In this document: positions 8,985-24,838 of the stretch, one piece after another
How the letters are laid out: each line of letters begins with the position of its first letter
How positions within the stretch are numbered: the first letter of the stretch is position 1
IMG/VR virus record: IMGVR_UViG_3300020179_000005
Coordinates: 124,001 to 188,000 of that record
Length of the DNA: 64,000 bases
Strand: one strand, 5' to 3'
Made by a program: the position numbers and the translations under genes
Notes under the pieces: generated by a model
Seen by the model: the letters and a program-made list of their open reading frames with translations, nothing else
Databases searched by the model: none
Told to the model about the DNA's origin: nothing

Positions 8985-9248
8985 ATGACAAGTCAAACAA
9001 GCAAGTTGGAAGAGAAAAACCCTCAATTATTCTACAACATCAAGATTGCCAGAATACAAAAGATGTATACTCTATTAGACAAAATAAGACGTGCTCAACT
9101 CGGAACCGACAAACAATCTAGAGTAGAATATAGGTACATGGAAAAGCAACTTCTAGTTGAAATAGATGAAGAAATTAAATTGGCTGTTAACATGACAAAA
9201 AAATATAAGATAAATTTTTCTGAGAAAGATCTAATCAAAAATGTCTAA
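8985..9248 (+). CDS. Hypothetical protein
   Basis: 87 aa, AGAGGA RBS, overlaps the recA start. Confidence 0.6.
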   Translation: MTSQTSKLEEKNPQLFYNIKIARIQKMYTLLDKIRRAQLGTDKQSRVEYRYMEKQLLVEIDEEIKLAVNMTKKYKINFSEKDLIKNV

Positions 9249-10203
9249 TGAATCTAAAGGTTTAGAACTGGCAATAGCTCAACTTGAAAGACAGTTTGGT
9301 TCTGGATCTATAATGCGTCTTGGTAATTTCAATGTTGAATCTTGGCCTTCAGTTCCAACAGGAGCTCCTTCGCTTGATGCGATTCTTGGAATTGGCGGAC
9401 TTCCAAGAGGAAGAATAGTTGAGATCTATGGTCCAGAATCTTCTGGTAAATCAACCATTGCGCTGTCTGTTGTTACCGAAGCTCAAAAATTAGGTTTACG
9501 TTGTGCGTACATAGATGCTGAACACGCGTTAGATCCAATTTATATGCAATCGTTAGGAGTAGATTTAGATAATCTTTTGTTGTCACAACCAGATTACGGT
9601 GAACAAGCTCTAGAAATAGTTGATCGTTTAATTAAAACAGGGGAAATAGGAGTTGTTGTGATTGACTCTGTTGCCTCACTAATACCCAAGGCTGAACTCG
9701 AAGGTGAAATGGAATCTGCCCAAATGGGACTACAGGCAAGATTAATGGCAAAGGCTATGCGTAAACTGGTTGGCTTAGCCTCAGAAAATAAAACTCTCTT
9801 AATTTTTATTAATCAACTTCGTAATAAAATTGGAATTATGTTTGGTAATCCAGAAACAACTCCAGGCGGCATGGCCCTAAAGTATGCTGCGTCTGTTAGA
9901 ATCGACATTCGCAAGAAAGAAGACTTAAAGGATAAGGATGGAAACTCTATAGGAGTTGCCGTTAAGGCAAAGGTCATCAAGAATAAAATGGCACCGCCGC
10001 TGAAAATGACAGAGTTTGACATACTTTATGGTAAAGGTATAGACAAGTATGGTTGTTATTTTGACATTGCCATAGAAAAAGGAATATTTTCACAACGTGG
10101 AGCCTGGGTGTATTATGGAGACGAATCATTTGCACAAGGTAGAGATAACGCAATTCAGAAACTAAAAGAAAGACAAGATATTTTAGATTTAATTAAATCA
10201 TGA
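9241..10203 (+). CDS. recA: RecA recombinase
   Basis: GGLPRGRIVEIYGPESSGKST, IDAEHALDP, VIDSVA, QARLM, FINQLR, GNPETTPGG, KNKMAPP. Confidence 0.98.
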   Translation: MSNESKGLELAIAQLERQFGSGSIMRLGNFNVESWPSVPTGAPSLDAILGIGGLPRGRIVEIYGPESSGKSTIALSVVTEAQKLGLRCAYIDAEHALDPIYMQSLGVDLDNLLLSQPDYGEQALEIVDRLIKTGEIGVVVIDSVASLIPKAELEGEMESAQMGLQARLMAKAMRKLVGLASENKTLLIFINQLRNKIGIMFGNPETTPGGMALKYAASVRIDIRKKEDLKDKDGNSIGVAVKAKVIKNKMAPPLKMTEFDILYGKGIDKYGCYFDIAIEKGIFSQRGAWVYYGDESFAQGRDNAIQKLKERQDILDLIKS

Positions 10204-11082: not shown

Positions 11083-11343
11083 TTGTCTTCCTTTTTTGCG
11101 GGCGATTTTATGAATATGATGTAGCCGGACTATGACTATACACCATGGAACATATTATGACAACTTTTGTGAACATTTTTTGGCAACCCATATAAAGTCA
11201 TATAAAATCCTAATACCTTAAAATAAGGAAAAATTTATAAAGGGGTAATAGTGAGTATTGTTGGAACATCAAAGCTCTAACATGCCCACCCCGGTATGGG
11301 GGTTCTTATCCACGAATACCAACAACATGAGGAGGAAAAACTC

Positions 11344-11706
11344 ATGAACGCAATACTGAAGGCAATCCAGGATGTACTCGTGTACATTCGTACAAACATG
11401 CGTGAAGATGAGCACATTTGTGCTGATCCATCGCTGTACCAACTGATCACCTTGAGTGGTCAAGTCGACATTGACATCATTGCTGGTGCACTGTACCAGC
11501 TGTATGTCTGTGAGTCACGCACTGTTATCAAGCCACATTCGCATGTGTTCATGCGTCCTGAGGTGCAAGATGCAGTGTACGCAATACTCGGGAATGACGA
11601 ACATGCAAAGAAGGCTGTTCGTTATTCCATCGAGTCAATTCAACACGAACAAATGGCTGAGAAGTGGGCTGCAGAAGGCCGCCCAGTAATCAACCTTCGT
11701 CCATAA
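11344..11706 (+). CDS. Hypothetical protein (first cassette gene)
   Basis: GAGGAGG RBS before ATG 11344. Confidence 0.7.
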   Translation: MNAILKAIQDVLVYIRTNMREDEHICADPSLYQLITLSGQVDIDIIAGALYQLYVCESRTVIKPHSHVFMRPEVQDAVYAILGNDEHAKKAVRYSIESIQHEQMAEKWAAEGRPVINLRP

Positions 11707-11766
11707 GGCGAAACCCCTGCATACCCAGGGGTCATTGTGGTGTGAGAGACCACGATCTGAAGAGCC
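11707..11766 (+). ncRNA. Hammerhead ribozyme (type II topology), copy 1
   Basis: GGC-GAAA-CCCCTG/CAGGGG-TC-ATTGTGGT/ACCACGAT-CTGAAGA-GCC: intact CUGAnGA and GAAA core, GUC site (cleavage predicted after 11733). Confidence 0.85.
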
Positions 11767-11803
11767 ATCTCATATTCCCCGGTACGGGGGTTGCCCCTCT
11801 GAT

Positions 11804-11853
11804 AACAAGGGCTGTGCTGTGCGTCTGACACCACATTAAACACGAATCAGATA
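11804..11853 (+). repeat. 50-bp repeat (second copy 12991-13040), predicted H-type pseudoknot
   Basis: Stem TGTG-ct-GTG/CAC-CACA; loop GTCTGA pairs with TCAGAT in copy 1, ATCTGG with CCAGAT in copy 2. Confidence 0.7.
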
Positions 11854-11916
11854 AAGCGAGTTACACGCTTTCAGCTTTCTATTATGTAACACTTTTCCAC
11901 AAGGAGGAAAAGAGTC

Positions 11917-12294
11917 ATGTTCAACACAATCATCATGGGAGTCAAGGAATTCTTCTTGACTTCATGCGAGCAATACGGACAGATGCTGAGCAACAAGCAG
12001 CAGTACATCGAGGTTGTGGGTAAGTACATTACCCATGATGGCAATCAGGTGTGGCTGGAGCTCAATGGATGCGATGCGTCTGACAGTCATGTGTTTCCCC
12101 ACAAGAACAACATCTTTGGATATCTCAATGAGATGTACAAGGGTAAGATTGTTCGTGTTAAGGGCGAGCGTCGTTTTGACTGGAAGACAGAAACGTGGGG
12201 TTACAGCTGGACCCTGCACTGCGTCAATGTCTGGGAACAGGGCATGGATGCAGCTCCCGCAAACATCAAGAAGATGTGCGGTACCAACTGCTGA
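11917..12294 (+). CDS. Hypothetical protein
   Basis: AAGGAGG RBS, 125 aa. Confidence 0.7.
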   Translation: MFNTIIMGVKEFFLTSCEQYGQMLSNKQQYIEVVGKYITHDGNQVWLELNGCDASDSHVFPHKNNIFGYLNEMYKGKIVRVKGERRFDWKTETWGYSWTLHCVNVWEQGMDAAPANIKKMCGTNC

Positions 12295-12304
12295 GAAGCA
12301 GTAA

Positions 12305-12364
12305 GGCGAAACCCCTGCGTACCCAGGGGTCATTGTGGTGTAAGAGACCACGATCTGAAGAGCC
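12305..12364 (+). ncRNA. Hammerhead ribozyme (type II topology), copy 2
   Basis: Near-identical to copy 1, differing only in loop positions; cleavage predicted after 12331. Confidence 0.85.
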
Positions 12365-12493
12365 ATCTTCGTCGTTGCTTGGAAAAGCGGAATGCAGCTT
12401 TAACGTTACCAAAGCTGCCAGCAGAAATGCTGACATTCAGGTTAAATGACACTTACCTTTAAAAGTATCACAAACAAACATGGAGGTAAAAAC

Positions 12494-12868
12494 ATGTTTG
12501 ATTTCATCCACATGCTGTTCACTGGGATCATCTTGATCCTTGTGGCAGCCTTCGCGGCCGTTGCAGTCGGTGTACTTGCACTGGTCGCATTTGGTCAAAT
12601 TCAGCAGGCACGCAGCGAAAAGGTGTTCGCACCAATCGCTTCACTTCTGGGCATGGTCATTCTCATGTTCGGATTGGCCGGCTTTCCCTGGATTGCTGCT
12701 TGGGCTTTTCCTGAGACGCGATGGGGAGTTGCAATTGGGTTGACCGCTTGGGTGTCAATCCTTTTCCTTGGAGCAGGCCTCATGGTCTGTGAAGAAGAAA
12801 TGACCAATGCACAAAAAAAGCGGAAGAAGGCAAAAAAGCGTTATCCGAGCTATAAAATCAACTATTAA
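12494..12868 (+). CDS. Membrane protein (about 3 TM helices, basic tail)
   Basis: GGAGG RBS; three hydrophobic stretches. Confidence 0.7.
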   Translation: MFDFIHMLFTGIILILVAAFAAVAVGVLALVAFGQIQQARSEKVFAPIASLLGMVILMFGLAGFPWIAAWAFPETRWGVAIGLTAWVSILFLGAGLMVCEEEMTNAQKKRKKAKKRYPSYKINY

Positions 12869-13087
12869 GTAAAAGAAATACACAAAAGAAATACACCCCT
12901 GGGTCAGCGGGCTCTGCTGATCCGGGGGTTTTTCTTTTATGACTAGCAGATAGATTGCTAGTTTGCTCCTCTGTTCTATGCAGAAATGCAAACAAGGGCT
13001 GTGCTGTGCATCTGGCACCACAATAAACACGAACCAGATATTCTTGTTGCCCGTTGGGGAATACCCAACAAACAAGGAGGTAAGCTC

Positions 13088-13429
13088 ATGCTTACTGCAA
13101 TCGCAATCGCAATCCTCGTGGGTGTGGCGGCTTCGGCTGTCACTGCCGCGTTCCTCCAAGCCAAGGTCGTCGGTCTGGTTCACCAGATCAAAGACCTCGT
13201 CGTCCAGATGGGTGACGAAAAGGCAAAGGCTCAAGAAATCATCTCCAAGTTGGAGAAGGATGTTGAGTCATGGAAAAGCAGCTCAAGCCGTCACCTGAAT
13301 GACTGGAGTGAGCTGTACAAAGAAAAGCGGGTATGGACTGAGGCACTTGAAAAAGCAGCCGAAGCCAAAGCCGCCAAGAAGGCCAACAAGACCAGCAAGA
13401 AGCCGGTCAAGAAGGCCAACAAGAAATAA
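13088..13429 (+). CDS. Membrane-anchored coiled-coil protein with Lys-rich tail
   Basis: AAGGAGG RBS; N-terminal TM segment; KKPVKKANKK end. Confidence 0.7.
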   Translation: MLTAIAIAILVGVAASAVTAAFLQAKVVGLVHQIKDLVVQMGDEKAKAQEIISKLEKDVESWKSSSSRHLNDWSELYKEKRVWTEALEKAAEAKAAKKANKTSKKPVKKANKK

Positions 13430-13463
13430 CCACGAATACCAACGGGCAACAATGAAAAGGATT

Positions 13464-13497
13464 ACCCCTGGGGACTTCGGTCTCCGGGGGTTTTTCT
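13464..13497 (+). terminator. Intrinsic terminator (near-identical copy at ~14628-14661)
   Basis: CCCCTGGGGAC-TTCG-GTCTCCGGGGG followed by a T tract. Confidence 0.85.
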
Positions 13498-13550
13498 TTT
13501 ATGACTAGCCATCCGGCTTGTCATCACCAACTACCTGAGGAGGTAGCGCA

Positions 13551-14609
13551 ATGAAACTTATGAATAAAATCAAGAGATTGCTCTTTATGAGCAAGACAGT
13601 AGAAACGGATATCGTCTGGGTGGCTTTCTCCACCTGGCCCAATCATGGGGAATGGCGTCTCCGTCGTCGGTACATCTGGGTAAGGAATGATCGCAAGATC
13701 GCTTTCTTTATCACTGGTGTCATCATGCTGTTTACCACACCAGTGGTAGCCAGTGTGGCGTACAATGTTCTCAGCGCAGATGAGGACACTGTGGTTGAAC
13801 AAACCACTGAAACAACTATCAACAGTGAACCTGTTGAACCCGGATACACAGAGTATTGCGAAGGCAATGTGTGGCAGTGGGATGAAGTGGTGCAAAATTG
13901 GACATGTCAAGTTGACATTGATCCTACTACCACTACAACATCAACAACACTGCCTCCTGTGCATCAGGTCCAGTATGTGTGTGATATGGCGCCATCAACC
14001 AGCAGTAACTACTTGTTCAGGACATTTACAAGTAGTAATGGCACGGTGATATCAGATGGTAGTGCAGAAGACACGCAGTACATCTTCCCATTGATCCAGG
14101 AGAGCGACATATACCTACATGTTGATATCATGGGCATTAATGAAGATCATGAATTGTGGCGTGAATTTGCAGATGTGGCAGAATATCTGTCAATTTATCT
14201 GAATAAGAACGTCACGGTTGGTATTGGTGAGGTTGATGAAGACTTCAATGGCATGGTTTTGCCAATCAGGTCTGAATTTGATCCTCGTCAATCAGGTACA
14301 AGCAATGGTGGTGGCGGTGTTGCATGGGCTGAAACGCGAGTAAGTGGCTTCTTTGGCATTTACTTTGCGGATACTGCCATATACATCCGCGAAAACTATT
14401 TGTTTGCTACTGGTGATTGGGCGAATGATCCACATCGATCATTTAAGTACACCGGGTTCAGCACCTTGATACACGAATTTGGTCATGCTATTGGCTTTGA
14501 TCATGTTCATGGCAAGGATGCAGTTATGTCATACGAAAGTGATGAATTTGTTCGTCATTACCTACCGGGTGATGATGCAGGTTATCAGGCACTAATTTGC
14601 AATAAGTAA
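13551..14609 (+). CDS. Membrane-anchored metzincin (matrixin-like) zinc metalloprotease
   Basis: HEFGHAIGFDH (HExxHxxGxxH), Met-turn AVMSY, TM segment, Thr-rich linker. Confidence 0.85.
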   Translation: MKLMNKIKRLLFMSKTVETDIVWVAFSTWPNHGEWRLRRRYIWVRNDRKIAFFITGVIMLFTTPVVASVAYNVLSADEDTVVEQTTETTINSEPVEPGYTEYCEGNVWQWDEVVQNWTCQVDIDPTTTTTSTTLPPVHQVQYVCDMAPSTSSNYLFRTFTSSNGTVISDGSAEDTQYIFPLIQESDIYLHVDIMGINEDHELWREFADVAEYLSIYLNKNVTVGIGEVDEDFNGMVLPIRSEFDPRQSGTSNGGGGVAWAETRVSGFFGIYFADTAIYIRENYLFATGDWANDPHRSFKYTGFSTLIHEFGHAIGFDHVHGKDAVMSYESDEFVRHYLPGDDAGYQALICNK

Positions 14610-14714
14610 GTAATAAGAAAAAGGATCACCCCTGGGGACTTCGGTCTCCGGGGGTTTTTCTTTTATGACTAGGCATCCGGCCTGTCATACCCAACTACCT
14701 AAGGAGGTAGCGCA

Positions 14715-15464
14715 ATGAATAACAAAATCCGAATAATCGAATCAATCAAGGAAGACCTACGCAGGGCCGGACATTCCCTTAGTGATTATCAGGCGGCTTG
14801 GAAGATGTTGCTAGATTCTGTCAAAGTCGAGGGTAATGACAGCAAGTTCAAGGTCATCAAGGTAGAGACCGAAAACAACAAGAAGATGTTTCCGCTTTTC
14901 TTGCACGACACCCTTACTGGCACAATTGACGAAGAAGAATGTTATCTTCACAACGAACTTAGCAGGTTTGAATTTGATATGACTCAAGGGTTTGTGGCTA
15001 ACGAACACGCTTACTTGTTTGCCTATGGAGAAAGCTTGATCGTTCAAGTGATTATTCGTTTTATGAGCTTTATCGGCGACAACTTTATATTTGATGATGA
15101 TGCGACAAAGTCTGGAAATCGAATCGGAGACTTTACTGCACTTGCGTGGGATTACAATAGCTACAAATACATGGTCGATCCACAAACTTATGGATCATCG
15201 CAAGACATTAATAAGGGCGGTCTTAAAGAGTTTTTCTTTCTTGATGACTCTCGTCATGGCTGGGGTCGCCAGAGTGGACTAGAAGTTCTTGCAGATGTAT
15301 TTGATGGTCATCCAGTTATTGAATCTATCTTGCAGACGAACATGCCAACTTTGTATGGCTACAAGCCTCACAATCCAAGGAATCCTTGGGACGTGTTAAT
15401 CGAGAAGCTAGACGAATACAACAAACAACTAATCGAACGAAACAACAAAAAGGAGAATCAATAA
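14715..15464 (+). CDS. Hypothetical protein
   Basis: 249 aa, AAGGAGG RBS. Confidence 0.7.
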   Translation: MNNKIRIIESIKEDLRRAGHSLSDYQAAWKMLLDSVKVEGNDSKFKVIKVETENNKKMFPLFLHDTLTGTIDEEECYLHNELSRFEFDMTQGFVANEHAYLFAYGESLIVQVIIRFMSFIGDNFIFDDDATKSGNRIGDFTALAWDYNSYKYMVDPQTYGSSQDINKGGLKEFFFLDDSRHGWGRQSGLEVLADVFDGHPVIESILQTNMPTLYGYKPHNPRNPWDVLIEKLDEYNKQLIERNNKKENQ

Positions 15465-16177
15465 TGACTAATTCACCAATGCCCAACCCAACACGCTTGG
15501 AGGCTATGCAACCAGTCTGGAACAATCTCCTAGGAGATGCGGTCTTGGTTGACATGAATAACAACAAGATTGAGTTGAAGCTCAATGAATTCAATCACGA
15601 CAAGAAGTTCTTCAAGATCAATGTCGTGGATGAAATCAAGGGTGAACAACATCTGATGGTTCCGTGTCCGATTGCCCTTGTTGAATACAATGGCGTTGAG
15701 TATCATCATAACTACTTACTTCTGTGGGGTGAATCTGCAGTTGTTCAGGTTAGGATAAATTACAGGACCAACTTTCATCCTGAATATCCTGATCACATCT
15801 GGTCGATTGATCCTTCACCGGAGACTGACTTCATGGCTTGGCTATGGAAATCAGATGCGTACGCTGCGGATGTCAAGGTTTTGTGGAACAATCGAAACCC
15901 TGAAGACAATTGCCAAGACTTTAGCCCAGATGGTCGTTTCAAGCTCATTAATTATAACGATCACTTTGAGCTTCACGAAAGGCTCTCAGGCAACTGGGTG
16001 TGGGTAGACGAATTTGTTCTCAATACGACTTTCTTGCTCGCGGATGTGTTGCTTATTCCGACACATGCTGATATGTGGAGTTGGCTTGTTTGGAGGGTAA
16101 ACACCGAGACCGACTTGTCCAATCCGGACAGCTACTTTAATACGAAGTATCACTACAACAAAAGGGAGAATCAATAA
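15464..16177 (+). CDS. Hypothetical protein, apparent paralogue of the preceding gene
   Basis: AGGAG RBS; shared segments YLFAYGESLIVQV / YLLLWGESAVVQV, DFTALAW / DFMAWLW, VLADVF / LLADVL, KKENQ / KRENQ. Confidence 0.7.
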   Translation: MTNSPMPNPTRLEAMQPVWNNLLGDAVLVDMNNNKIELKLNEFNHDKKFFKINVVDEIKGEQHLMVPCPIALVEYNGVEYHHNYLLLWGESAVVQVRINYRTNFHPEYPDHIWSIDPSPETDFMAWLWKSDAYAADVKVLWNNRNPEDNCQDFSPDGRFKLINYNDHFELHERLSGNWVWVDEFVLNTTFLLADVLLIPTHADMWSWLVWRVNTETDLSNPDSYFNTKYHYNKRENQ

Positions 16178-16485
16178 TGCGTAAGCAGAGCAGAAGAACA
16201 CTTCCGAGGTGCAATGCACAGATATGGCCGAAGAAGAAATACAAACTGAAGAACGGTTTGGAAAGAACACCTGCCATACCCGGTCAACCGAATAATCAGC
16301 GGTGCACCAGGTCAATTAGGTGTCCTCACCACAAGAATCGTAATTCAGAATGCCCAGTAATTGAAGAGGTGGGCAAGACAGTATTCCTTTCCTGGGAACA
16401 GGTCAAGGAATTAATCAACAATGGTCACAGAGAAGTGACTGGAAGAAACTACTACGAGGACAGAAAGGAGAGCAGCAATGCCTAA
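16177..16485 (+). CDS. Basic hypothetical protein with Cys/His cluster
   Basis: TAATG coupling; RCNA…RCTR..RCPHH. Confidence 0.6.
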   Translation: MRKQSRRTLPRCNAQIWPKKKYKLKNGLERTPAIPGQPNNQRCTRSIRCPHHKNRNSECPVIEEVGKTVFLSWEQVKELINNGHREVTGRNYYEDRKESSNA

Positions 16486-16645
16486 TACGCCACTAGCGGG
16501 AGAAAAGTACGGTTGTGCAAAACAACGCAGAGTCGTACATTTCGCAGTGACACTTGAACAATACGAAAGTATTGAAGATGACGCCATGATGGCAAACATG
16601 ACGGTATCTGAATACATTCGTTTCAAGTTGGAATTGAATAAATAA
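16478..16645 (+). CDS. Small ribbon-helix-helix-like DNA-binding protein
   Basis: 55 aa read by hand: RVVHFAVTLEQYESIEDDAMMANMTVSEYIRFKL; AAGGAG RBS. Confidence 0.55.
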   Translation: MPNTPLAGEKYGCAKQRRVVHFAVTLEQYESIEDDAMMANMTVSEYIRFKLELNK

Positions 16646-16697
16646 CTAATAAAAGATTGGGGGATGGCCCTTACCCTCTGGGGGCCATCCCTTTTTC

Positions 16698-16830
16698 TTT
16701 ATTGCTAGCCATCCGGTTTCTTGCTACCGGGTGGTTGGCTCTTCGTAGAGGAGATGCGTGCTGCTCTCCTCTGCGCTCCTTTGCCAGAGATGAGTACATT
16801 ACTAGTAAATCCAGTTTTTTTTATGACTAG
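16698..16830 (+). repeat. ~135-bp non-coding two-hairpin unit (second copy ~17136-17271)
   Basis: Both copies lie between two motif copies; stem GGAGA/TCTCC in one versus GGGGA/TCCCC in the other. Confidence 0.7.
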
Positions 16831-16873
16831 GAATATGGTTTCTTAGTTAAGGGTCTTAGGAGGGCCCAGAACA

Positions 16874-17086
16874 ATGAAGGACTTATTCGATTTATTTGAG
16901 GAAGAATTTGATCTCAGATTGCAATGGATAGAAATGCTGGGTAGGCAGCGGATTCTTTGGAATAGTCAGGGAAGAGGAAGAAACGATGAAGTGGACAAAG
17001 AATTTCGTAGGGTTTGCGATGAGTGCTGCAGGATTGGCATCTTGTTGGCAAGGAAGCAGACTGAATTAGAGGAATTTCAACTCTAA
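16874..17086 (+). CDS. Hypothetical protein
   Basis: AGGAGG RBS in a shared leader. Confidence 0.6.
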   Translation: MKDLFDLFEEEFDLRLQWIEMLGRQRILWNSQGRGRNDEVDKEFRRVCDECCRIGILLARKQTELEEFQL

Positions 17087-17335
17087 TTCATGTGTAAGGA
17101 AAGGATGAGTACATTACTAGTAAATTCATTTTTTCTTTATGGCTAGCCATCCGGTTTCTTGCTTTCCGGTGGTTGGCTCTTCTGAGAGGGGATGCGTTCG
17201 GCTCCCCTTTATGCTTTTCTTTGCCAGGGATGAGTACATAACTAGTAAATCCAGTTTTTTTTTATGGCTAGAGTAAAGGTCTCTGGCTAGGCAGCTCTAC
17301 TGCGCCTAAAAGATAGTAGAGGGAAGGAGCTGCTC

Positions 17336-17662
17336 ATGGCTGGCTACAGTAAGCCAGAAATGAAGCAGTGGCTTTTTGACTTGGTTCTGGAAGGTAATAA
17401 AACGCTTCCAGACTGGCAAGTTGAGATCGACACAAGTGTGTGGGCAGCCTGCACACCAGAAGGTTTCTCCTTGCAGCTCAAGCGAACCGTTGGGGATTAC
17501 TACAAAGTGATCCACCTAGGCGTTATTCGCTGGGATCAGTTGGAGACTGCAATGAGGTTTTCGTGGGTCGACCGCGAACTCGGTGTAGTAAAGCCACCCG
17601 AAGAGGTTATCAACTGGATGTTACTGGCCAGTTCAGATGCCTCCGACGATTCGGTTGAATAA
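17336..17662 (+). CDS. Hypothetical protein
   Basis: AAGGAG RBS. Confidence 0.65.
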   Translation: MAGYSKPEMKQWLFDLVLEGNKTLPDWQVEIDTSVWAACTPEGFSLQLKRTVGDYYKVIHLGVIRWDQLETAMRFSWVDRELGVVKPPEEVINWMLLASSDASDDSVE

Positions 17663-17720
17663 ACCGATTTCGTTGTGATTATGATGGCGATCACCATATC
17701 GCCTGACCAAGAGAAGAAAG

Positions 17721-17741
17721 AGGGGCTTCGGCCCCTTTTTC
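17721..17741 (+). terminator. Intrinsic terminator AGGGGC-TTCG-GCCCCT plus T tract (also ~18058, ~19890, ~24753)
   Basis: GC stem with a C(UUCG)G tetraloop followed by Ts. Confidence 0.85.
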
Positions 17742-17799
17742 TTTATGGCTAGTATTTAGGTCTCTAATCTGAGATCGCTAGTCAAGAAAGGAAAACCCA

Positions 17800-18003
17800 A
17801 TGGCACGGAAGAAGTCGGCCACCACGCAGAACCCAAAGCGTCGGCGTGGCTTGACTGGCGCTGGGTACATCAACACGTTTGAGTACCTGCCGCAGATGGA
17901 AGCCGTTCATCCGAGGAACGGCTACGGTCTGCGTGCTCCTTGGGAGTATCGCCGTAACTGGCGGCGCTTCCACAAGAACAGCAAGCCGAAAGGGAAGAAG
18001 TAA
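17800..18003 (+). CDS. Small basic hypothetical protein
   Basis: AAAGGA RBS; ends NSKPKGKK, like 19579..19851 (NSKPKGKR). Confidence 0.6.
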   Translation: MARKKSATTQNPKRRRGLTGAGYINTFEYLPQMEAVHPRNGYGLRAPWEYRRNWRRFHKNSKPKGKK

Positions 18004-18183
18004 TTCTTCCATGACACATGATGGCGATCACCATGTCGCCTGACCAAGAGAAGAAGAAGGGGCTTCGGCCCCTTTTTCTTTATGACTAGGACTTAGGTCT
18101 CTAGTTATCGTGCCAGGTATGAGCGACACACCTAATCAACAAGTGTCGCACCTTTCCCGAAAGGGAGAAAGGGGGTATCCATC

Positions 18184-18654
18184 ATGGATACTTTCCTGGT
18201 AGTAATGGCAACGCTCTTCTTGGGCGTTGTGACCCTGGTTTCGGTGATCAATGCCGAAGCCATCAACAAGCACTGGAATCTCGCAATGGAGGCGTACGCA
18301 GATCTTGCGTATTCTTTCCAGGAGTTCTGGTGGACAAGCATCAGGCCTGAAATCAGGGGTCTGATGGGCAAAAAGAACCCAGTCTGGGAACCGCCAACGG
18401 CACTTGGGTACTACTTTGGGGATATCGTCAAGCTTGACGACTCTGAGAAGTGGTACATGGTGTTGTCCAGCGGTATCTGGATGATTTCAGTGAGCTCACC
18501 GCTACTCGTCCATGAGTGCGATGACACACTGAAAGTCGTTCAGGCCAAAGGCTGGAAGTACGTGTACAACAACGAAAAAGTCGTTGAACACGTACCCGCA
18601 GATGCCGTAGAGGCATTTCTCGACAGAATGATCGAGGAGAAGATCTACGGCTGA
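18184..18654 (+). CDS. Hypothetical protein with N-terminal TM segment
   Basis: 156 aa between motif and terminator. Confidence 0.65.
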   Translation: MDTFLVVMATLFLGVVTLVSVINAEAINKHWNLAMEAYADLAYSFQEFWWTSIRPEIRGLMGKKNPVWEPPTALGYYFGDIVKLDDSEKWYMVLSSGIWMISVSSPLLVHECDDTLKVVQAKGWKYVYNNEKVVEHVPADAVEAFLDRMIEEKIYG

Positions 18655-18803
18655 ATGTAAGTAGTTGATTGGCACGAGTCAACTACCTACAGAAGAATTA
18701 GGGTGGTCCCTTACCCTCTGGGGGACCACCCTTTTTCTTTATGACTAGTTTTTAGGTTACCAAAGGTGGCCGCTAGTCAAGGGTCTTAGGAGGGCCCACA
18801 ACA

Positions 18804-19445
18804 ATGGAAGCAATGTTCATCATGCTCATGGAGTTCATGAGCAAAGTCATGAATGCTGTGGAGACACGGCATCATGACGGAAAGCGTACGAAAGGCGAAG
18901 GCTCCGGCATTCATTCTTTCGTTTCGCTTGTACGATGGATCAATCAGAACAAAGGCTTGGTCAAGGCAGCAATTGCCAATGACAGAGAAATGTTCGAGTT
19001 GATCATGAAGCAGGCAAGTCAAACGTTGAAGACATACATCAGAACCGGTGTGTGGAACACGGTGTACTGGGTTACCTCATTCGATGGTTACTTCTACCGC
19101 CACCTGTTCGTCGACGACGACACACGCTACAAAATCAATCCGAAAGTTCACTTCGTGTGGACTCCTCGGAATGGACAAAGCATGACCAAGGACGAAGACA
19201 ATCGTCTTTTTGGTAAAATAAGAAACGTTGCAAACAGTCTGGATAAGGCTGGATACGACGTGTTTTGCTATGACATCGAGTGGGAACCAATCACACTAAA
19301 CATTGGAGACGGCGCGGAAAAACGCGTCAAATACAGCTGTGGAAATGTGTTTGAGCTTCTCGAAGAGTTCCTCGACCGGCCAAGCCAAGAAATCAGTAAA
19401 CTGGTTTGGCAAGCAAAAATGGAAGACAAACTCCAGCACGAATAA
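18804..19445 (+). CDS. Hypothetical protein
   Basis: 213 aa, AGGAGG RBS. Confidence 0.7.
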   Translation: MEAMFIMLMEFMSKVMNAVETRHHDGKRTKGEGSGIHSFVSLVRWINQNKGLVKAAIANDREMFELIMKQASQTLKTYIRTGVWNTVYWVTSFDGYFYRHLFVDDDTRYKINPKVHFVWTPRNGQSMTKDEDNRLFGKIRNVANSLDKAGYDVFCYDIEWEPITLNIGDGAEKRVKYSCGNVFELLEEFLDRPSQEISKLVWQAKMEDKLQHE

Positions 19446-19578
19446 ATGAATAAATAAAGACTGAGGGTGGTTCGGGAAATCCGGCCACCCTCTTTCTTTA
19501 TGGCTAGGAATTAGGTCTGTAGTTTTAGACCGTTAGCTTTTGTGTGTGTATGTGTCAATCAAGTACCAGGAGGTACTC

Positions 19579-19851
19579 ATGTCAATACACGAAATGAACG
19601 ACGACTTCCTCGACAGGATGTTTCTCTTGCAGGAACGCCTGGAAAAGGATGATCGTCAAGGAAACAAAATCCACAAGCGACGAGGTACACACTTCGTCAG
19701 GTACTGGTATTTCCCAAACGAGGACCTGTTCATCGTTGGGAAGTGTGAATCAATGGGCAAAGTGGTGAACACCTGGAGTAAGGAAACAACGTTTCTTCTT
19801 TCCAGCGAACCACCACGCAAAAGCAATAGCAAGCCGAAAGGCAAGCGATAA
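19579..19851 (+). CDS. Hypothetical protein
   Basis: AGGAGG RBS before ATG 19579. Confidence 0.65.
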   Translation: MSIHEMNDDFLDRMFLLQERLEKDDRQGNKIHKRRGTHFVRYWYFPNEDLFIVGKCESMGKVVNTWSKETTFLLSSEPPRKSNSKPKGKR

Positions 19852-19964
19852 CAACCAACACACACACACACACAAATGAAATAAGGGAGAGGGGCTTCGG
19901 CCCCTCTTTCTTTATGACTAGGAATATGGTTTCCTGGTCAAGGGTCCAAGGAGGGCCCAAAATA

Positions 19965-20858
19965 ATGAAAAGCATTAACGACATGGAAATGAAGCGACAG
20001 AAATTGACACAACTATGCCAAGAGGTCACAAGTGATGTAATTAAGAAACATGGTTCCCTACGTAATCAATGTGGCCATGGAGCGTCTGAGCTCAGGAAAC
20101 GGGCAAGGAAATCGGGAATTAAGCTCAATCTTCAGGGTGGCTTATTTAATTATGGCACTGAGCACAACTGGTGTGTTGACCCAGAAACAAACGAGATATA
20201 CGATCCAACTGCAGAGCAGTTCATTATTGGAATCAATGGCCTACAGAATGAAGAGACCTCCAAGCTCTACTTGTCATTGAACGATGATGAAATATCTGAT
20301 TTGCAATCTCTTGCCAGGAGCAAGGGATTTATTTGGAGCTTCAGTGAGGGTGTTTCGCAAATCGTCTTTGGCTACCAAGTAAGTATCGCAAATCAGAAAA
20401 TAGTTGACAAGTTTCGGTTTTACTATCCAGACTTGACTCATGTTGTTGTTCGCAACACAAAGGATGAAGTACGGAAAGCAAAGAATGGTAACACCTATGC
20501 TGTTATCAGAAACAATGTTGTTGAGTTTCATATCGATAAAATGAACGTCAAGAAATGGAAGAATGACTTAAACGTAACAGGTCCTGAAGTGGTGAGTTAC
20601 ATTGTGTTCAAGAATCCGAACAACAGCTATTGGATCAGGGTTGTTGAACAAAGGCTGTTTGTTTCAAAGAATGGAAAGACTGGTGTTATAACCAAACTTG
20701 GTGAAGAATTGAAGAACATCAAGATCAATAAGAAAGGCAAGCTTTACAGGACAATAAAGATCGAAGACGGATGTTTTGTGAATGAAATGATTGATCAGCA
20801 TTACTTTTTGCTAATCAAGAGATTTGAAGAACTTACATCACGTAATAGTGATCAATAA
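19965..20858 (+). CDS. Protein with N-terminal transglutaminase/papain-like Cys-His-Asp domain
   Basis: NQCGHGA…EHNWCVD…IYDPTAEQF pattern. Confidence 0.6.
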   Translation: MKSINDMEMKRQKLTQLCQEVTSDVIKKHGSLRNQCGHGASELRKRARKSGIKLNLQGGLFNYGTEHNWCVDPETNEIYDPTAEQFIIGINGLQNEETSKLYLSLNDDEISDLQSLARSKGFIWSFSEGVSQIVFGYQVSIANQKIVDKFRFYYPDLTHVVVRNTKDEVRKAKNGNTYAVIRNNVVEFHIDKMNVKKWKNDLNVTGPEVVSYIVFKNPNNSYWIRVVEQRLFVSKNGKTGVITKLGEELKNIKINKKGKLYRTIKIEDGCFVNEMIDQHYFLLIKRFEELTSRNSDQ

Positions 20859-20973
20859 ATATTCTTTAGCCGATTGATATACAACTAGTAAATTTAACTA
20901 CATTATTAATCTTTTATTTTTATGACTAGTCATCCGACTTAGTCATCAAACCAAAAATGGGGAGGATAAACCC

Positions 20974-23016
20974 ATGAAAGCAATAAGGTGGATTAACAGG
21001 TTCCAAGACAACTCGTTTCAAGAGATCGAAGTTGATCTAGACAATCTGAAAGCAAAGAACACTTATCAGTTAGTAGAAATCATGCGTCAACTCAACATAA
21101 TCGAGAACAAGCTAGAAACAGGTATTGGTATTGTTGTTGATGAAAACGACCAAAAAGTGGCCGATTGGTTCACTTTCCCAAATCTCAAAGTCTTGATTTA
21201 TGATGAGATTGATGAGTTGGCTGCTAATGAACAAAATGCTGCTCGTGAATCAAAGAACATGATCAGCGGGTACAGGTTTCGGAAATTTGGAACAACGGAA
21301 GTTGGAAAGAACCTTTGGCCAGAGTCACGGTATTATTTAGCACAGATCGTCAATGCTGAGACCGGTGAAGTAGATAAGAACATGTTGGGACAATGGGGTT
21401 ACACCAAGCATGACTGGGGTCAGTGGATATGGGGCCTAGAAGTTAATCTCAATAAGAGAAAGAATGGCAAGGGGTGGACAATTCATTGTTCTTTAAGTGC
21501 GACTTATTACAACAACTATGAATCAATATCAGATGAAAGAAGCAAGAATTATGACCCCCTTTATGTCAAGCTCACAAACGCACTTGAAACAGCGGGAATT
21601 AAAATGAAGCACAAGAAAACGTGCACGACTTTCTTTCAACCAATGAAAGAAATGATCTTTGTCAATGAAACTAAGGTTGGAGTACGTTGCTTGACCACAA
21701 AAGTCGATAAAAATGGATTCAAACCATTGTGGGGGCAATCTCTTTCTCAGCAATTGAAATTCAAGTTTCTACAGGGTGAAGTACAGATTTTGGTCAATGA
21801 TGCGTATCGTTGTCTAGAAAAGGTATACAAGAAGACAGACATTTTGCCAATTTGTGAAAACCTGTCATTTGACAGAATTTTCCCAGACGAATACAATAGT
21901 TTGAGCTACCCCATGCCGACTCAACTGTATGGAATAACTCAAGATCAGTTGCGTTATCTTTCTGGTGCCAAAAACATTCACCAAGCATTAAATAATGCTT
22001 TTGGTACTCCTGTAGAGAAAATGGGCAAAGAAGAATCACGGTATATCTTTCTTGAGATTCCTATCAAAGAAAATTCTGGAATTACAAGAAGAGCATTTGG
22101 TGGGCAACAACAATTCAAGCATTGGCACCATTTGTGCTCGGCCATTCAAATGGTCAGAATGTTCAAAGCATTTGGACTTAATTTCTTTGAACAAATGAAG
22201 ATTGATTTTGTTCTGCCACCAATACCTGTAATGCACAAGGTTGAAAGACTTGGAGGCGATCAGAATTATGCGATATACCCAATAAGAACAGGGTCTAATC
22301 CGGGGAATTACCGTATATACAATGACATACAGAACATGCAAAAGTACTTCAAGACCTTTGGTGCAACAACTGCATACAAGAATCAAATCTTGCAGACTTT
22401 TACATGGGACGAAACTGATACAAAGAAGCTGGAAGAGCTCGCAAAAGAACCACATCGCACCCACGCCACCGCAGCGTGTGAGCGTCAGAATCAGATCTAT
22501 CATCTATTAAATCAAGTTGCTGACACTCTTTCTTCATTGAAGAAAATTCCTGTTGGAAATCGCAGAAAAGCGGTTATTGAACAGGTAAAGAGGCAGAAGT
22601 ATGACTTTGATCAAACTCACGATTACGTAGTTACAGAAGCAATGAAATACAAGAATGAAGCCAGGCCAACGAAAAATACCAGGTTGATCAATTCGTTCGA
22701 TGGCAAAGAAATCATTGATGGAGTAATCTTCAGGGCTCCTAAGACCACGCATGATCTTTACCTGTGGGGTACACAACAGAACAACTGCATCGGAACTTCT
22801 TGGGCAGAAGTTGTTGCCGACAGATATCAATTCATCGTTGGCTTTGAATATGCAGATACGGGTAAGTGGATTGGACATGCAAGGTTCGTACTCCTTGATT
22901 CCGGCAAAGAGCTTGAAATTCAAGAGTTTCGAGGTAAGGGTGAAGAGCCACGAGAAGATCTACGTAAAGAGCTTGTCAAGTGGATGAAGAGCAATTTGGT
23001 AAAGAAGGAAAACTAA
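20974..23016 (+). CDS. 680-aa protein with C-terminal PcfJ-like domain
   Basis: FRAPKTTHDLYLWGTQQNNCIG…IQEFRGK resembles the PcfJ motif. Confidence 0.6.
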   Translation: MKAIRWINRFQDNSFQEIEVDLDNLKAKNTYQLVEIMRQLNIIENKLETGIGIVVDENDQKVADWFTFPNLKVLIYDEIDELAANEQNAARESKNMISGYRFRKFGTTEVGKNLWPESRYYLAQIVNAETGEVDKNMLGQWGYTKHDWGQWIWGLEVNLNKRKNGKGWTIHCSLSATYYNNYESISDERSKNYDPLYVKLTNALETAGIKMKHKKTCTTFFQPMKEMIFVNETKVGVRCLTTKVDKNGFKPLWGQSLSQQLKFKFLQGEVQILVNDAYRCLEKVYKKTDILPICENLSFDRIFPDEYNSLSYPMPTQLYGITQDQLRYLSGAKNIHQALNNAFGTPVEKMGKEESRYIFLEIPIKENSGITRRAFGGQQQFKHWHHLCSAIQMVRMFKAFGLNFFEQMKIDFVLPPIPVMHKVERLGGDQNYAIYPIRTGSNPGNYRIYNDIQNMQKYFKTFGATTAYKNQILQTFTWDETDTKKLEELAKEPHRTHATAACERQNQIYHLLNQVADTLSSLKKIPVGNRRKAVIEQVKRQKYDFDQTHDYVVTEAMKYKNEARPTKNTRLINSFDGKEIIDGVIFRAPKTTHDLYLWGTQQNNCIGTSWAEVVADRYQFIVGFEYADTGKWIGHARFVLLDSGKELEIQEFRGKGEEPREDLRKELVKWMKSNLVKKEN

Positions 23017-23132
23017 TAAATATTCTTTAGCCGACTGATATAAGACTAGTATATTTAACTACATTACTAGTCTTTTTTTTTATGACTAGGAATATGGTTT
23101 CCTAGTCAAGGGTCTTAGGAGGGCCCAAAACA

Positions 23133-23672
23133 ATGAAAGCAAACCGCTACTACATCGCTGGGACTGGCTCTCGTGAGCTGATTCTGGATGTTGACAAGCG
23201 TCGTGAGGTCCGTGATTATCTTGCGGACCTTCTGACAAAGGCAAAGGAAAAGCATGGTGACAAGTTGATTGTCATCAGCGGAATGGCAGAAGGCTTTGAT
23301 GAAGCACTTGCTCGTGCTGCAATCATGGCTGATGTGTCGTTTATCGCGGCAATTCCCAGCCCTGATTACATTGAGTACTACTGGGGTAAAACCAGTATGC
23401 TCAGGCGTAACAGAATGAGTGAAGCACAGGAAATCCTGTCAAAGGCACAAGAAATCGTTTACGTGTGCCCATCAAGCCCAAGCAAACGTGGCAATGGCGT
23501 TAAGTATCCGCAAAACGGTGGTGCAAACATCGACCGAAACGAGTGGATGGTCGACCATGCAAACATTGTCTGGGTGTACAATCCAACTACTCCAGGTACC
23601 GCTAGGTGCTATGCCTACCTCAAGAAGGTTGGCAAGCCCGCATTTATCATTGACACCACTAAAAAGCTTTAA
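23133..23672 (+). CDS. SLOG-superfamily (YspA/DUF1273-like) nucleotide-binding protein
   Basis: IAGTGSR, VISGMAEGFD, AAIP, RNEWMVD, GT..C motifs. Confidence 0.75.
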   Translation: MKANRYYIAGTGSRELILDVDKRREVRDYLADLLTKAKEKHGDKLIVISGMAEGFDEALARAAIMADVSFIAAIPSPDYIEYYWGKTSMLRRNRMSEAQEILSKAQEIVYVCPSSPSKRGNGVKYPQNGGANIDRNEWMVDHANIVWVYNPTTPGTARCYAYLKKVGKPAFIIDTTKKL

Positions 23673-23795
23673 CCAGCTAATTGGTTGGTAATAAGGGATC
23701 TATATATGGCTAGTAAATTTAACTATATTACTAGTCTTTTATTTTTTATGGTTAGCCATCCGGCTACCAAAATCAACAATGGGGAGGAAAAACCC

Positions 23796-24227
23796 ATGAG
23801 TAAGCGGTTTGATCAAGAAATACAGAAGGCAATACAGAAGGGTTACGTTGAAGGACTGACCATCAAGTGCGAGCGATGTGCTGGCACTGGATTGTGGCCA
23901 ACCATCGAAGATCCGGAAGGCTTGCACCACAAGTGCTTTCGGTGCGATGGAACTGGACAAGTTCAGATAATGAGCATCGCGCAAGTTGCACTCATCAGGA
24001 AACTGATGTATGTGGACCAAGTTATTGCCAGGGAGTCCGCTTTCGGAGGCACTACCGCGCAATGGTCACGTATCGAATACAAGATGGCTGGCCATTTGGC
24101 TGGCATGCCCTATCTGTCAATGGCAGAAGGCAGAAAAATCATTGGTGAACTGATGAACTCGAAGAAGACCAAGGAAAAAGAAAGCCTTGATCAATGCGAG
24201 ATCGACTTCGGTCACATCTACGAATAA
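23796..24227 (+). CDS. Protein with DnaJ-type zinc-finger repeats
   Basis: CERCAGTG and CFRCDGTG. Confidence 0.7.
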   Translation: MSKRFDQEIQKAIQKGYVEGLTIKCERCAGTGLWPTIEDPEGLHHKCFRCDGTGQVQIMSIAQVALIRKLMYVDQVIARESAFGGTTAQWSRIEYKMAGHLAGMPYLSMAEGRKIIGELMNSKKTKEKESLDQCEIDFGHIYE

Positions 24228-24372
24228 CAAGGCAAGCAAGAAAAGAAGAAGGGGTCCAAAAGGGCCCCTTTTTCTTTATGACTAGTACTTAGACTTCAAG
24301 TATCAGTCAGGGTTGAAGTGTCGTTTCCCAAATCAAAAATGACGCAATGTACATCCATACAAGGAGGATGAC

Positions 24373-24690
24373 ATGAACAAGCAAATCAAGTGCGGTGCCT
24401 GCGGGCATACGCACCCGACCGTGGCAGAGGTATTCAGCTGCCACAACACACTGGGGGTTTTCAAACTCCAGGAAGCGGATGAACTGGCGAAAGACATGCC
24501 AAAGCGCCAGTTCGTCAAGACTCCAAAGGCACAGGAGCCCAAGACCTACCAGGTCCATGTGTTCCCGACCAAGGAGGGCGCCGAGGCATTCATTGCCAAA
24601 ACGCCAAAGACCCGACTCGGAACGACGAAAGTCAAGTACGTGGACGGACAGCCCGAGAAGACCTATCAGGTCATCGAGAGCTTGAAGTAA
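24373..24690 (+). CDS. Hypothetical protein with N-terminal CxxCxxxH..C zinc site
   Basis: AAGGAGG RBS; KCGACGHTH…SC. Confidence 0.65.
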   Translation: MNKQIKCGACGHTHPTVAEVFSCHNTLGVFKLQEADELAKDMPKRQFVKTPKAQEPKTYQVHVFPTKEGAEAFIAKTPKTRLGTTKVKYVDGQPEKTYQVIESLK

Positions 24691-24838
24691 TAACCTAGCA
24701 GGGGAAAGAAGTCACCCCTGCAAACCAAGAGTCGGGTTCAGCCGACAGTAGAAGGGGCTTCGGCCCCTTTTACTTTATGACTAGTACTTAGGTCTCTATT
24801 CTGAGGCCGCTAGTAGCTCAAGAGAAAGGAAACTCATC

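What the first reader, a model, noticed from the sequence alone, without database searches (positions are those of the whole stretch)
11804..13040. Repeated 50-nt pseudoknot with a compensatory base change in two 5' leaders
Seen: copies at 11804-11853 and 12991-13040. Loop GTCTGA pairs with TCAGAT in the first and ATCTGG with CCAGAT in the second (A-U to G-C covariation), joined by an A-rich linker. Both lie 50-65 nt upstream of a start codon. Inference: a riboswitch-like element, an exonuclease-blocking structure protecting the ribozyme-cut 5' end, or a translation enhancer.
Basis: partly seen in the sequence, partly recalled or inferred. Interest (0 to 1): 0.62.

Follow-up and report, generated by a model that had tools for sequence, protein, structure and literature searches.

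The report
Portable pseudoknot leader in phage mRNAs
The repeated 50-base stretch is real and is the core of an undescribed folded RNA module (a pseudoknot) that a group of lake-water giant phages place in front of several unrelated small genes; what it does there is still unknown.

Summary
Observation confirmed. The two 50-nt copies (11804-11853, 12991-13040) are 46/50 identical, have unrelated flanks, and are the only copies in the 209.7-kb phage genome. Thirteen sequence variants came from related lake phages. Twelve keep all 13 base pairs of the proposed H-type pseudoknot (P1 7 bp with a bulged U, 1-nt L1, P2 6 bp, 11-nt A-rich L3). Each helix has one compensatory pair, and one variant carries a 38-nt insert in L3. 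A closing helix P0 (GCYC/GRGC) extends the motif upstream. There is no Rfam match and no paper.

The module is portable. It precedes at least five unrelated ORFan families, sits after a sigma70-like promoter or a terminator/TATGRCTAG cassette, and swaps with another structured leader. Only copy 1 here lies behind a hammerhead, so the link to a ribozyme-cut end is not general. Nearly invariant helices, no constant expression platform and incoherent cargo argue against a riboswitch.

My best guess (about 0.3) is a docking site for a macromolecule that controls mRNA fate. Put-like antitermination and a decay roadblock remain open. Function is untested.

The parts
11180..11208 (+). Sigma70-like promoter (TTGGCA-17-TAAAAT) heading the type-1 leader
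   Evidence: Consensus scan, 10 of 12 matches. The same A/T-rich stretch is conserved upstream of the leader in L044 and other relatives. The transcription start is not mapped.
11260..11301 (+). Leader hairpins Ha (11260-11281) and Hb copy 1 (CCCCGGTATGGGG, 11289-11301)
   Evidence: Both are present in all type-1 leaders of relatives. Ha keeps its pairing through C-G to U.G changes.
11706..11774 (+). Hammerhead type II ribozyme HH1; predicted cut between 11733 and 11734
   Evidence: Rfam RF02276 scores 32.6 bits, E 2.3e-4, below the gathering score of 37. The core CUGANGA, GAAA and GUC are all present.
11777..11789 (+). Hb copy 2 (CCCCGGTACGGGG)
   Evidence: It duplicates the hairpin at 11289-11301. 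ORF136 plus HH1 lie between the two copies.
11793..11853 (+). PK-A copy 1. P0 is 11793-11796 with 11809-11812. P1 is 11813-11816 plus 11819-11821 with 11829-11835. P2 is 11823-11828 with 11847-11852. L3 is 11836-11846.
11854..11890 (+). PK-B, a second H-type pseudoknot. Stem 1 is 11854-11858 with 11866-11870. Loop bases 11860-11865 pair with 11885-11890.
   Evidence: Of 11 pairs, 8 change on both sides; 95.9% of cells are paired; 0 of 500 shuffles reach the observed values.
11892..11912 (+). Hairpin CUUUUCC/GGAAAAG holding the Shine-Dalgarno AAGGAGG (11901-11907)
   Evidence: Read from the sequence and seen in the MFE fold. It is present only in gene A-type leaders.
11917..12294 (+). Gene A, 125 aa, a probable OB-fold protein
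   Evidence: No Pfam, PHROG or PADLOC match. AF2 model pLDDT 77. The best structural neighbours are SSB, RPA and aaRS OB folds, but the scores are weak.
12304..12372 (+). Hammerhead type II ribozyme HH2; predicted cut between 12331 and 12332
   Evidence: RF02276 scores 31 bits, E 6e-4. The homologous ribozyme follows the cargo gene in L037, L040, L042, L043, L044 and L046.
12895..12962 (+). Intrinsic terminator (12895-12937), TATGACTAG motif (12938-12946) and hairpin ACTAGCA/TGCTAGT (12942-12962)
   Evidence: This is the first of 16 such cassettes on the + strand.
12965..13040 (+). PK-A copy 2. P0 is 12965-12968 with 12996-12999. An inserted hairpin UGCA-GAAA-UGCA lies at 12979-12990. P1 is 13000-13003 plus 13006-13008 with 13016-13022. 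P2 is 13010-13015 with 13034-13039.
13041..13429 (+). Copy-2 sub-leader (hairpin 13053-13069, SD 13074-13080) and gene C (13088-13429), a 113-aa protein with an N-terminal TM helix and a coiled coil
   Evidence: In L047 the same sub-leader and gene follow a different leader module.

Best explanation
The 50-nt repeat is the core of a 60-75-nt RNA module in the 5' untranslated leaders of phage mRNAs. It consists of a 4-bp closing helix P0 stacked on an H-type pseudoknot: P1 of 7 bp with a bulged U, a 1-nt loop 1, P2 of 6 bp, and an 11-nt A-rich loop 3 that should lie in the P1 minor groove. The module is self-contained and does not depend on its cargo gene. I think it most likely works as a docking site for a macromolecule, most probably a phage RNA-binding protein. 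Binding would then set the fate (translation or stability) of the mRNA that carries it, in the way the phage T4 gene 32 leader pseudoknot does. The two copies would define a small regulon. In this genome the candidate ligand is the probable OB-fold product of gene A, which is encoded directly behind copy 1. What is shown: the repeat itself, pairing kept by compensatory changes, portability, and a promoter-proximal position. What is inferred: that anything binds, what binds, and the effect.
For: Structure: all 13 pairs are kept in 12 of 13 variants, with double-sided changes at 10:32 (UA/CG) and 25:44 (GC/AU/GU); 2 of 500 shuffles reach the observed values, and slid controls collapse. L057 carries a 38-nt insert (predicted hairpin) inside L3 and keeps P2. 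RNAalifold finds P0 independently, with its third pair as CG 5, UG 3, UA 2. Sequence-specific recognition: 10 of 13 PK-A pairs never vary, whereas in the same loci 8 of 11 PK-B pairs covary. L1 is always 1 nt, and L3 is 11 nt in every variant except L057. Modularity: the module has sharp borders, other lake contigs match only 12992-13037, and it precedes five unrelated gene families. It occupies the same slot as another structured leader in front of the same sub-leader and gene C. Precedent: the T4 gene 32 pseudoknot lies 67 nt upstream of its start codon and binds an OB-fold protein (PMC3014915); here the distances are 63 and 47 nt. Gene A's model has the strand-helix-strand order typical of an OB fold, and its best structural neighbours are SSB and RPA. 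Gene A is the cargo in most type-1 leaders.
Against: There is no RNA or binding data of any kind; no RNA run holds the locus. The spacing and sequence between PK-A and the ribosome site are not conserved: PK-B, or one of two unrelated hairpin leaders, fills the gap. Simple occlusion of the ribosome site is therefore unlikely. The same type-1 leader carries cargo unrelated to gene A in L043 and L044, and I could not check whether those phages have gene A elsewhere. The OB-fold assignment is weak (Foldseek E 0.016 at best, Z 5-5.8). All variants come from closely related phages, so the invariant helices could partly reflect recent spread. One variant (L067) breaks a P2 pair.
Confidence: 0.3

Rival explanations
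1. A put/nut-like antitermination signal. The nascent pseudoknot would bind the transcribing RNA polymerase, alone or with a factor, and let it read through the many intrinsic terminators downstream.
For: There are two similar copies per genome in promoter-proximal leaders, as with HK022 putL and putR (about 70 nt, with a minor-groove triplex; PMC9378689). Copy 1 follows the only good sigma70-like promoter of the region (11180-11208), and copy 2 sits right after the first of 16 same-strand terminators spread over about 12 kb. No sigma70-type promoters lie at the cassettes, and no phage RNA polymerase or sigma was detected. The module works independently of what follows it, and its helices are sequence-constrained.
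Against: PK-A also occurs in the middle of arrays and in two consecutive cassettes (L047, L048). Each PK-led gene is followed at once by a terminator or a hammerhead, which suggests monocistronic units. The conserved TATGRCTAG motif with a covarying hairpin starting just after it looks like a phage-specific promoter; phiKZ late promoters are TATG with G as +1 (PMC4666361). The put RNA itself has no pseudoknot.
Confidence: 0.2
2. A passive stabiliser. The compact pseudoknots PK-A and PK-B would block 5'-end-dependent decay (RNase J exonuclease, or RNase E scanning) and so protect the downstream ORF, as an xrRNA does. Together with the 2',3'-cyclic phosphate end left by the 3' hammerhead, this would give a long-lived monocistronic mRNA.
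For: Two tandem pseudoknots lie between the 5' end and the ORF. In this genome copy 1 lies 70 nt behind a hammerhead cut. The usual layout is leader, cargo gene, hammerhead. The function would be independent of cargo.
Against: A roadblock needs structure rather than fixed helix sequence, yet the PK-A helices are almost invariant while those of PK-B vary. Most copies are not behind a ribozyme, and all are preceded by other hairpins (Ha and Hb, or the cassette hairpin) that could already protect the end. The host and its RNases are unknown.
Confidence: 0.2
3. A small-molecule riboswitch with an H-type pseudoknot aptamer.
For: The size, the fixed loop lengths and the conserved unpaired bases (ACAAG, bulged U, AAAC in L3) resemble pseudoknot aptamers. 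In type-1 leaders the upstream UCUGRU is complementary to the P2 3' strand and covaries with it (A-U, G-C, G.U), which could be an alternative pairing.
Against: No Rfam family matches at E up to 10, even in 140-nt searches. There are three unrelated downstream sub-leaders and no shared terminator or SD-sequestering partner. The cargo genes are unrelated phage ORFans. The alternative pairing is absent in 8 of 12 variants.
Confidence: 0.1
4. No RNA function of its own. The element would be a conserved junction of mobile regulatory cassettes, kept similar by recombination, or a DNA-level site.
For: Cargo genes are exchanged between a conserved leader and a conserved hammerhead or terminator. ORF136 plus HH1 sit between duplicated hairpins. 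All carriers are close relatives.
Against: Variable sites avoid paired positions (5 of 26 paired positions vary against 10 of 24 unpaired). Every change at a paired position keeps the pairing, including two double changes. A hairpin-shaped insertion falls exactly in L3. No sigma70-like promoter lies in the motif. The adjacent PK-B covaries strongly at the RNA level.
Confidence: 0.07

Closest known systems
Phage T2/T4 gene 32 autoregulatory leader pseudoknot
   Same: Both are H-type pseudoknots with coaxial stems and a 1-nt loop 1, placed in a phage mRNA leader about 65 nt upstream of the start codon (PMC3014915). The gene behind copy 1 is predicted to be an OB-fold protein, as gp32 is.
   Different: The sequences are unrelated. 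Here the element occurs twice per genome and precedes unrelated genes. A structured region, not an unstructured A/U tract, follows it. Binding has not been tested.
HK022 put RNAs (putL, putR)
   Same: Both have two similar copies per phage genome, are promoter-proximal and self-contained, are 50-75 nt long, and have a likely minor-groove triplex (PMC9378689). Many terminators lie downstream.
   Different: put is two stem-loops without a pseudoknot, and there is no sequence similarity. Antitermination has not been tested here.
H-type pseudoknot riboswitch aptamers (preQ1-I, SAM-II, SAM-V)
   Same: The topology and the A-rich loop 3 are shared.
   Different: No covariance-model match, no expression platform, and no metabolic gene context.
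Exoribonuclease-resistant RNAs (xrRNA) of flaviviruses and plant viruses
   Same: Both are compact pseudoknotted folds placed upstream of the RNA that would be protected.
   Different: xrRNAs are known only against eukaryotic Xrn1. No ring-like fold can be inferred here, and most copies are not near a processed 5' end.
Hammerhead ribozymes flanking single genes in prophages (Perreault et al. 2011, PMC3088659)
   Same: The context matches: type II hammerheads bracket gene A and follow the cargo gene in relatives.
   Different: That work does not describe a pseudoknotted 5' leader partnered with the ribozymes.

Membership tests
H-type RNA pseudoknot (structural class) | The hairpin loop pairs with a downstream strand, and both helices are kept across relatives. 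| tested here: met
   All 13 pairs are 100% paired in 11 aligned variants, with one compensatory pair per helix; 2 of 500 shuffles reach the observed values, and slid controls give 23-50% paired. A twelfth variant with an L3 insertion also keeps all pairs.
preQ1-I riboswitch (RF00522) | Match to the family covariance model. | tested here: not met
   No hit at E up to 10 in searches of 1.5 kb and about 140 nt.
preQ1-I, SAM-II and SAM-V riboswitches | Location upstream of queuosine or methionine/SAM genes. | tested here: not met
   The downstream genes are ORFans with no Pfam, PHROG or PADLOC family.
Riboswitch (general) | A conserved expression platform coupled to the aptamer. | tested here: not met
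   Three unrelated sequences follow PK-A: PK-B, the W2 hairpin leader, and the L048 copy-1 leader.
T4 gene 32-type autoregulatory pseudoknot | The pseudoknot lies in the leader of the gene for the nucleic-acid-binding protein that binds it. | tested here: inconclusive
   Gene A is probably an OB fold, but the scores are weak, and other cargo (110-aa, 153-aa and 208-aa families, gene C) is unrelated.
T4 gene 32-type autoregulatory pseudoknot | An unstructured A/U-rich tract runs from the pseudoknot to the ribosome site. | tested here: not met
   PK-B or stable hairpins occupy this interval.
HK022 put | Two stem-loops in a V shape with no pseudoknot, and sequence similarity to put. | tested here: not met
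   The structure here is a pseudoknot and the sequence is unrelated.
HK022 put | Promotes read-through of downstream terminators. | not testable with these tools
   Terminators are present downstream, but there are no transcription data.
xrRNA | Stalls a 5'-3' exoribonuclease. | not testable with these tools
   No Rfam xrRNA family matched. This needs an enzymatic assay.
Type III antitoxin RNA (ToxI-like) | Tandem direct repeats immediately upstream of an endoribonuclease toxin gene. | tested here: not met
   The copies are single and 1.2 kb apart, and no toxin family was found downstream.
Pistol and other small self-cleaving ribozymes | Match to the family model. | tested here: not met
   The only ribozyme hits are the two hammerheads, and nothing falls on PK-A.
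Hammerhead type II (context elements) | Catalytic core plus three stems, with the Rfam gathering score reached. | tested here: inconclusive
   The core is intact and E is 2e-4 to 6e-4, but 32.6 and 31 bits fall below the gathering score of 37. Cleavage is not tested.

The most novel reading that the evidence does not exclude
PK-A is a factor-independent RNA that acts directly on host machinery. It would be either a pseudoknotted, put-like antiterminator that carries RNA polymerase through an array of 16 terminators, or the first bacterial or phage exoribonuclease-resistant RNA. It would be used by giant phages as a plug-in leader for swappable accessory genes, together with a 3' hammerhead.
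Probability: 0.15. Interest if true: 0.8.

Novelty: new variant of a known kind. Interest (0 to 1): 0.58.

Why it matters
Very few structured regulatory RNAs are known in phage mRNAs; the gene 32 pseudoknot, put and nut are the classic cases. This locus offers a compact, covariation-supported tandem-pseudoknot leader. It is portable between genes, is paired with hammerhead ribozymes at the other end of the cargo gene, and can be exchanged for a second structured leader. If it controls mRNA stability, translation or terminator read-through, it would be a new regulatory part. It would also show how giant phages express and shuffle accessory ORFans. The element is only about 60 nt long, so it is easy to test.

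Tried and rejected
1. Rfam: a gathering-score scan of the whole window and three E-value scans found nothing on PK-A.
2. BLASTN of the locus against 50,697 phage records found no match.
3. Exact and degenerate pattern scans of IMG/VR found only the same phage species. The 15-mer hits L007-L034 are chance matches. L006 is a chance match inside a coding region on the other strand.
4. A scan of GTDB genomes found no match.
5. RNA-seq evidence: no RNA run holds the locus. Laying DNA contigs showed only that PK-A occurs with other flanks.
6. A promoter inside the motif: no sigma70-like site. CUGACA/CAGAUA is a poor match, and position 25 covaries with position 44, which a promoter would not explain.
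7. Coding potential: copy 1 contains stops. The open frame through copy 2 is not conserved in relatives.
8. Thermodynamic z-scores of nested folds are unremarkable (0 to -1.1, and -3 for the copy-2 leader). This is expected for pseudoknots and is not informative.
9. Circularisation of the 598-nt RNA between the two hammerheads: no RtcB or RNA ligase was found in the phage, and relatives have only the downstream ribozyme.
10. Checking whether relatives that carry PK-A also carry gene A: their records are not held.
11. A literature search by sequence words found only unrelated primer hits.
12. The search of protein representatives, complex prediction and alternative genetic codes were not used.

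Full report
**Setting.** The window is bases 124001-188000 of a 209,701-bp IMG/VR phage record with direct terminal repeats. The record was assembled from lake-water metagenomes. The region encodes RecA (9241-10203), a ClpX-like ATPase, helicases, six tRNAs and many ORFans. Pfam models detected no phage RNA polymerase, sigma factor, RtcB or RNA ligase.

**Observation.** They are 46/50 identical, and the similarity ends abruptly on both sides. A Hamming scan of the genome finds no third copy. A covariance model confirms this: 80.3 and 78.1 bits, against 11.3 bits for the next hit. The four differences are at motif positions 20, 25, 33 and 44.

**Relatives.**
- DNA pattern scans of IMG/VR found only the same phage species. 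GTDB genomes gave nothing.
- Homologues of the downstream protein gene A (P0001 at 88% identity, P0002 at 49%) led to Logan and ENA contigs that carry the element.
- One JGI metagenome scan added four more contigs.
- Homologues of a 208-aa cargo protein and of gene C added further contigs.
- In total there are 13 distinct sequence variants.

**Structure of PK-A.**
- Layout: P1 is positions 10-13 and 16-18 paired with 26-32, with a bulge in which U15 is invariant. L1 is one base. P2 is positions 20-25 paired with 44-49. L3 is 11 nt (WWAAACRYGMA).
- Eleven aligned variants form a standard pair in 100% of 143 cells.
- Pair 10:32 occurs as UA (9) or CG (2). Pair 25:44 occurs as GC (6), AU (3) or GU (2). 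Pair 20:49 occurs as GU (10) or AU (1).
- Only 2 of 500 shuffles reach the observed pairing, and sliding the 3' partner drops pairing to 23-50%.
- A twelfth variant (L057) carries a 38-nt insert, predicted to form a hairpin, exactly inside L3. It keeps every pair and again has C10-G32.
- Variable columns avoid paired positions: 5 of 26 paired positions vary, against 10 of 24 unpaired.
- RNAalifold independently adds a closing helix P0. Upstream GCYC pairs with motif positions 6-9 (GRGC). Its third pair is C-G in 5 variants, U.G in 3 and U-A in 2. Its apical loop is either short or holds a small covarying hairpin: UGCAAU/AUUGCA, UGCAGU/ACUGCA or UGCA/UGCA.
- One variant (L067) has C-to-A and G-to-T changes at otherwise invariant positions, and one of them breaks a P2 pair. 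It looks degenerate or error-ridden.

**A second pseudoknot.** Directly 3' of copy 1, and of most copies in relatives, lies PK-B (11854-11890). Its stem is AAGCG/CGCUU. Its loop GUUACA pairs with UGUAAC 14 nt downstream. Relatives have GGACG/CGUCU and AAGUG/CACUU for the stem, and AUCACA/UGUGAU and ACCGUA/UACGG for the loop pairing. Eight of 11 pairs change on both sides, 95.9% of cells are paired, and 0 of 500 shuffles reach this. The leader is therefore a structured RNA. In the same loci the PK-B helices drift freely, while 10 of 13 PK-A pairs never vary. This points to sequence-specific recognition of PK-A.

**Context.** PK-A is a portable module.
- Type-1 context (copy 1, L037-L046): a sigma70-like promoter (window 11180-11208), then hairpins Ha and Hb, then GCCCCUCUG, PK-A, PK-B, the Shine-Dalgarno sequence and the cargo gene. 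A type II hammerhead follows right after the stop codon.
- The cargo at this one locus differs between phages: gene A, a 110-aa protein, or a 208-aa protein.
- In the window phage, ORF136 and hammerhead HH1 are inserted between two copies of Hb. This is why copy 1 lies 70 nt behind a ribozyme cut. Relatives lack that upstream ribozyme.
- Type-2 context (copy 2, L047, L048, L057, L067-L069): an intrinsic terminator, then the motif TTTATGRCTAG, then a covarying hairpin, then GCYCCUCUG and PK-A.
- That terminator-motif cassette occurs 16 times on the + strand between 12.9 and 24.8 kb. Copy 2 is in the first cassette.
- No sigma70-like promoter lies at these cassettes. TATG with G as +1 is the phiKZ late promoter (PMC4666361), so a phage-specific promoter is possible but not shown.
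- Other contigs from the same lakes match only 12992-13037 and have foreign flanks.
- In L047, a different structured leader takes PK-A's place in front of the same sub-leader and gene C. This leader has three hairpins with a conserved loop UUAACGUUACCA. It also occurs at window 12370-12436.

**Cargo.** None of the cargo proteins matches Pfam, PHROGs or PADLOC. Gene A is probably an OB fold. Its AF2 model has pLDDT 77 and pTM 0.70, and its neighbours are almost all SSB, RPA or aaRS OB domains. The scores are weak, however: Foldseek E 0.016 at best and Z 5-5.8. The 208-aa family models well (pLDDT 84) as two repeated alpha/beta domains, with only faint similarity to the RnlA N-terminal domains.

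**Known families.** No Rfam family matches PK-A or PK-B, even in 140-nt searches at E up to 10. No paper contains the sequence. Hammerheads flanking single genes in prophages are known (PMC3088659).

**Mechanism.**
- The data show a compact, sequence-constrained, cargo-independent, promoter-proximal pseudoknot.
- A riboswitch is unlikely: there is no constant expression platform, the cargo is incoherent, and the helices are invariant.
- Protection of a ribozyme-cut end is not general.
- The options that remain are: a docking site for an RNA-binding protein that controls translation or stability (my choice, about 0.3, with gene A's product as the candidate); put-like antitermination (about 0.2); and a passive decay roadblock (about 0.2).
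- In type-1 leaders only, the upstream UCUGRU can pair with the P2 3' strand and covaries with it (A-U, G-C, G.U). Eight of 12 variants lack this pairing, so a switch is not established.
- None of these functions can be tested without RNA or biochemical data, and no RNA run holds the locus.

Noticed in passing
window 11706-11774 and 12304-12372: These are the only two hammerhead (type II) matches in the 209.7-kb genome, and they bracket gene A. Cuts at 11733/34 and 12331/32 would release a 598-nt RNA with 5'-OH and 2',3'-cP ends that holds PK-A, PK-B and gene A. No RtcB or RNA ligase is encoded, and relatives keep only the downstream ribozyme.
   Followed up: partly
window 12370-12436; also L044:955-1008, L047 (reverse strand), L060, L061: A second undescribed structured leader. 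It has CGUCG, a variable covarying hairpin, a hairpin with the conserved loop UUAACGUUACCA, and CAGCA-GMAA-UGCUG. It follows hammerheads or TATGRCTAG cassettes and can replace PK-A in front of the same gene.
   Followed up: partly
window 12895-24800: Sixteen same-strand cassettes, each with a strong intrinsic terminator, then TTTATGRCTAG, then a covarying hairpin (GACUAG..CUAGUC), then a small ORFan. They resemble mobile promoter/terminator cassettes of T4-type phages (from memory, not checked). No sigma70-like promoters lie at them.
   Followed up: partly
window 11289-11301 and 11777-11789: The hairpin CCCCGGTAYGGGG is duplicated on either side of ORF136 (11296-11706) plus HH1. This suggests that the block was inserted by recombination into a leader that is uninterrupted in relatives. 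ORF136 starts inside the first hairpin and has no obvious Shine-Dalgarno sequence.
   Followed up: partly
window 11917-12294: Gene A (125 aa, with conserved Cys and His) is predicted to be an OB-fold protein. The support is weak but consistent.
   Followed up: yes
L044:262-885 and homologues P0003-P0021: The 208-aa cargo family models confidently as two repeated alpha/beta domains. Its faint Foldseek similarity (E about 1e-3, low TM) is to the N-terminal domains of the E. coli toxin RnlA. The same family is found behind PK-A, behind the other leader, or behind a tRNA gene.
   Followed up: partly
L067:3072-3127: A PK-A copy with C-to-A and G-to-T changes at four otherwise invariant positions, one of which breaks the central P2 pair. 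It may be a decaying copy, or it may reflect sequencing errors.
   Followed up: no
L037:557-614, L040, L042, L043, L044: The hammerheads of relatives read CUGAAUGAG where the window has CUGAAGAG, which is a one-base insertion in the catalytic core. All hammerheads are followed by the conserved CCAUCUC, which can pair with the stem I loop UGAGAG as a tertiary pseudoknot.
   Followed up: no
window 13551-14609 and L046:567-1631: A 352-aa protein with a weak Matrixin/M10 zinc-protease motif (HEFGHAIGFDH) lies in the next cassette.
   Followed up: no
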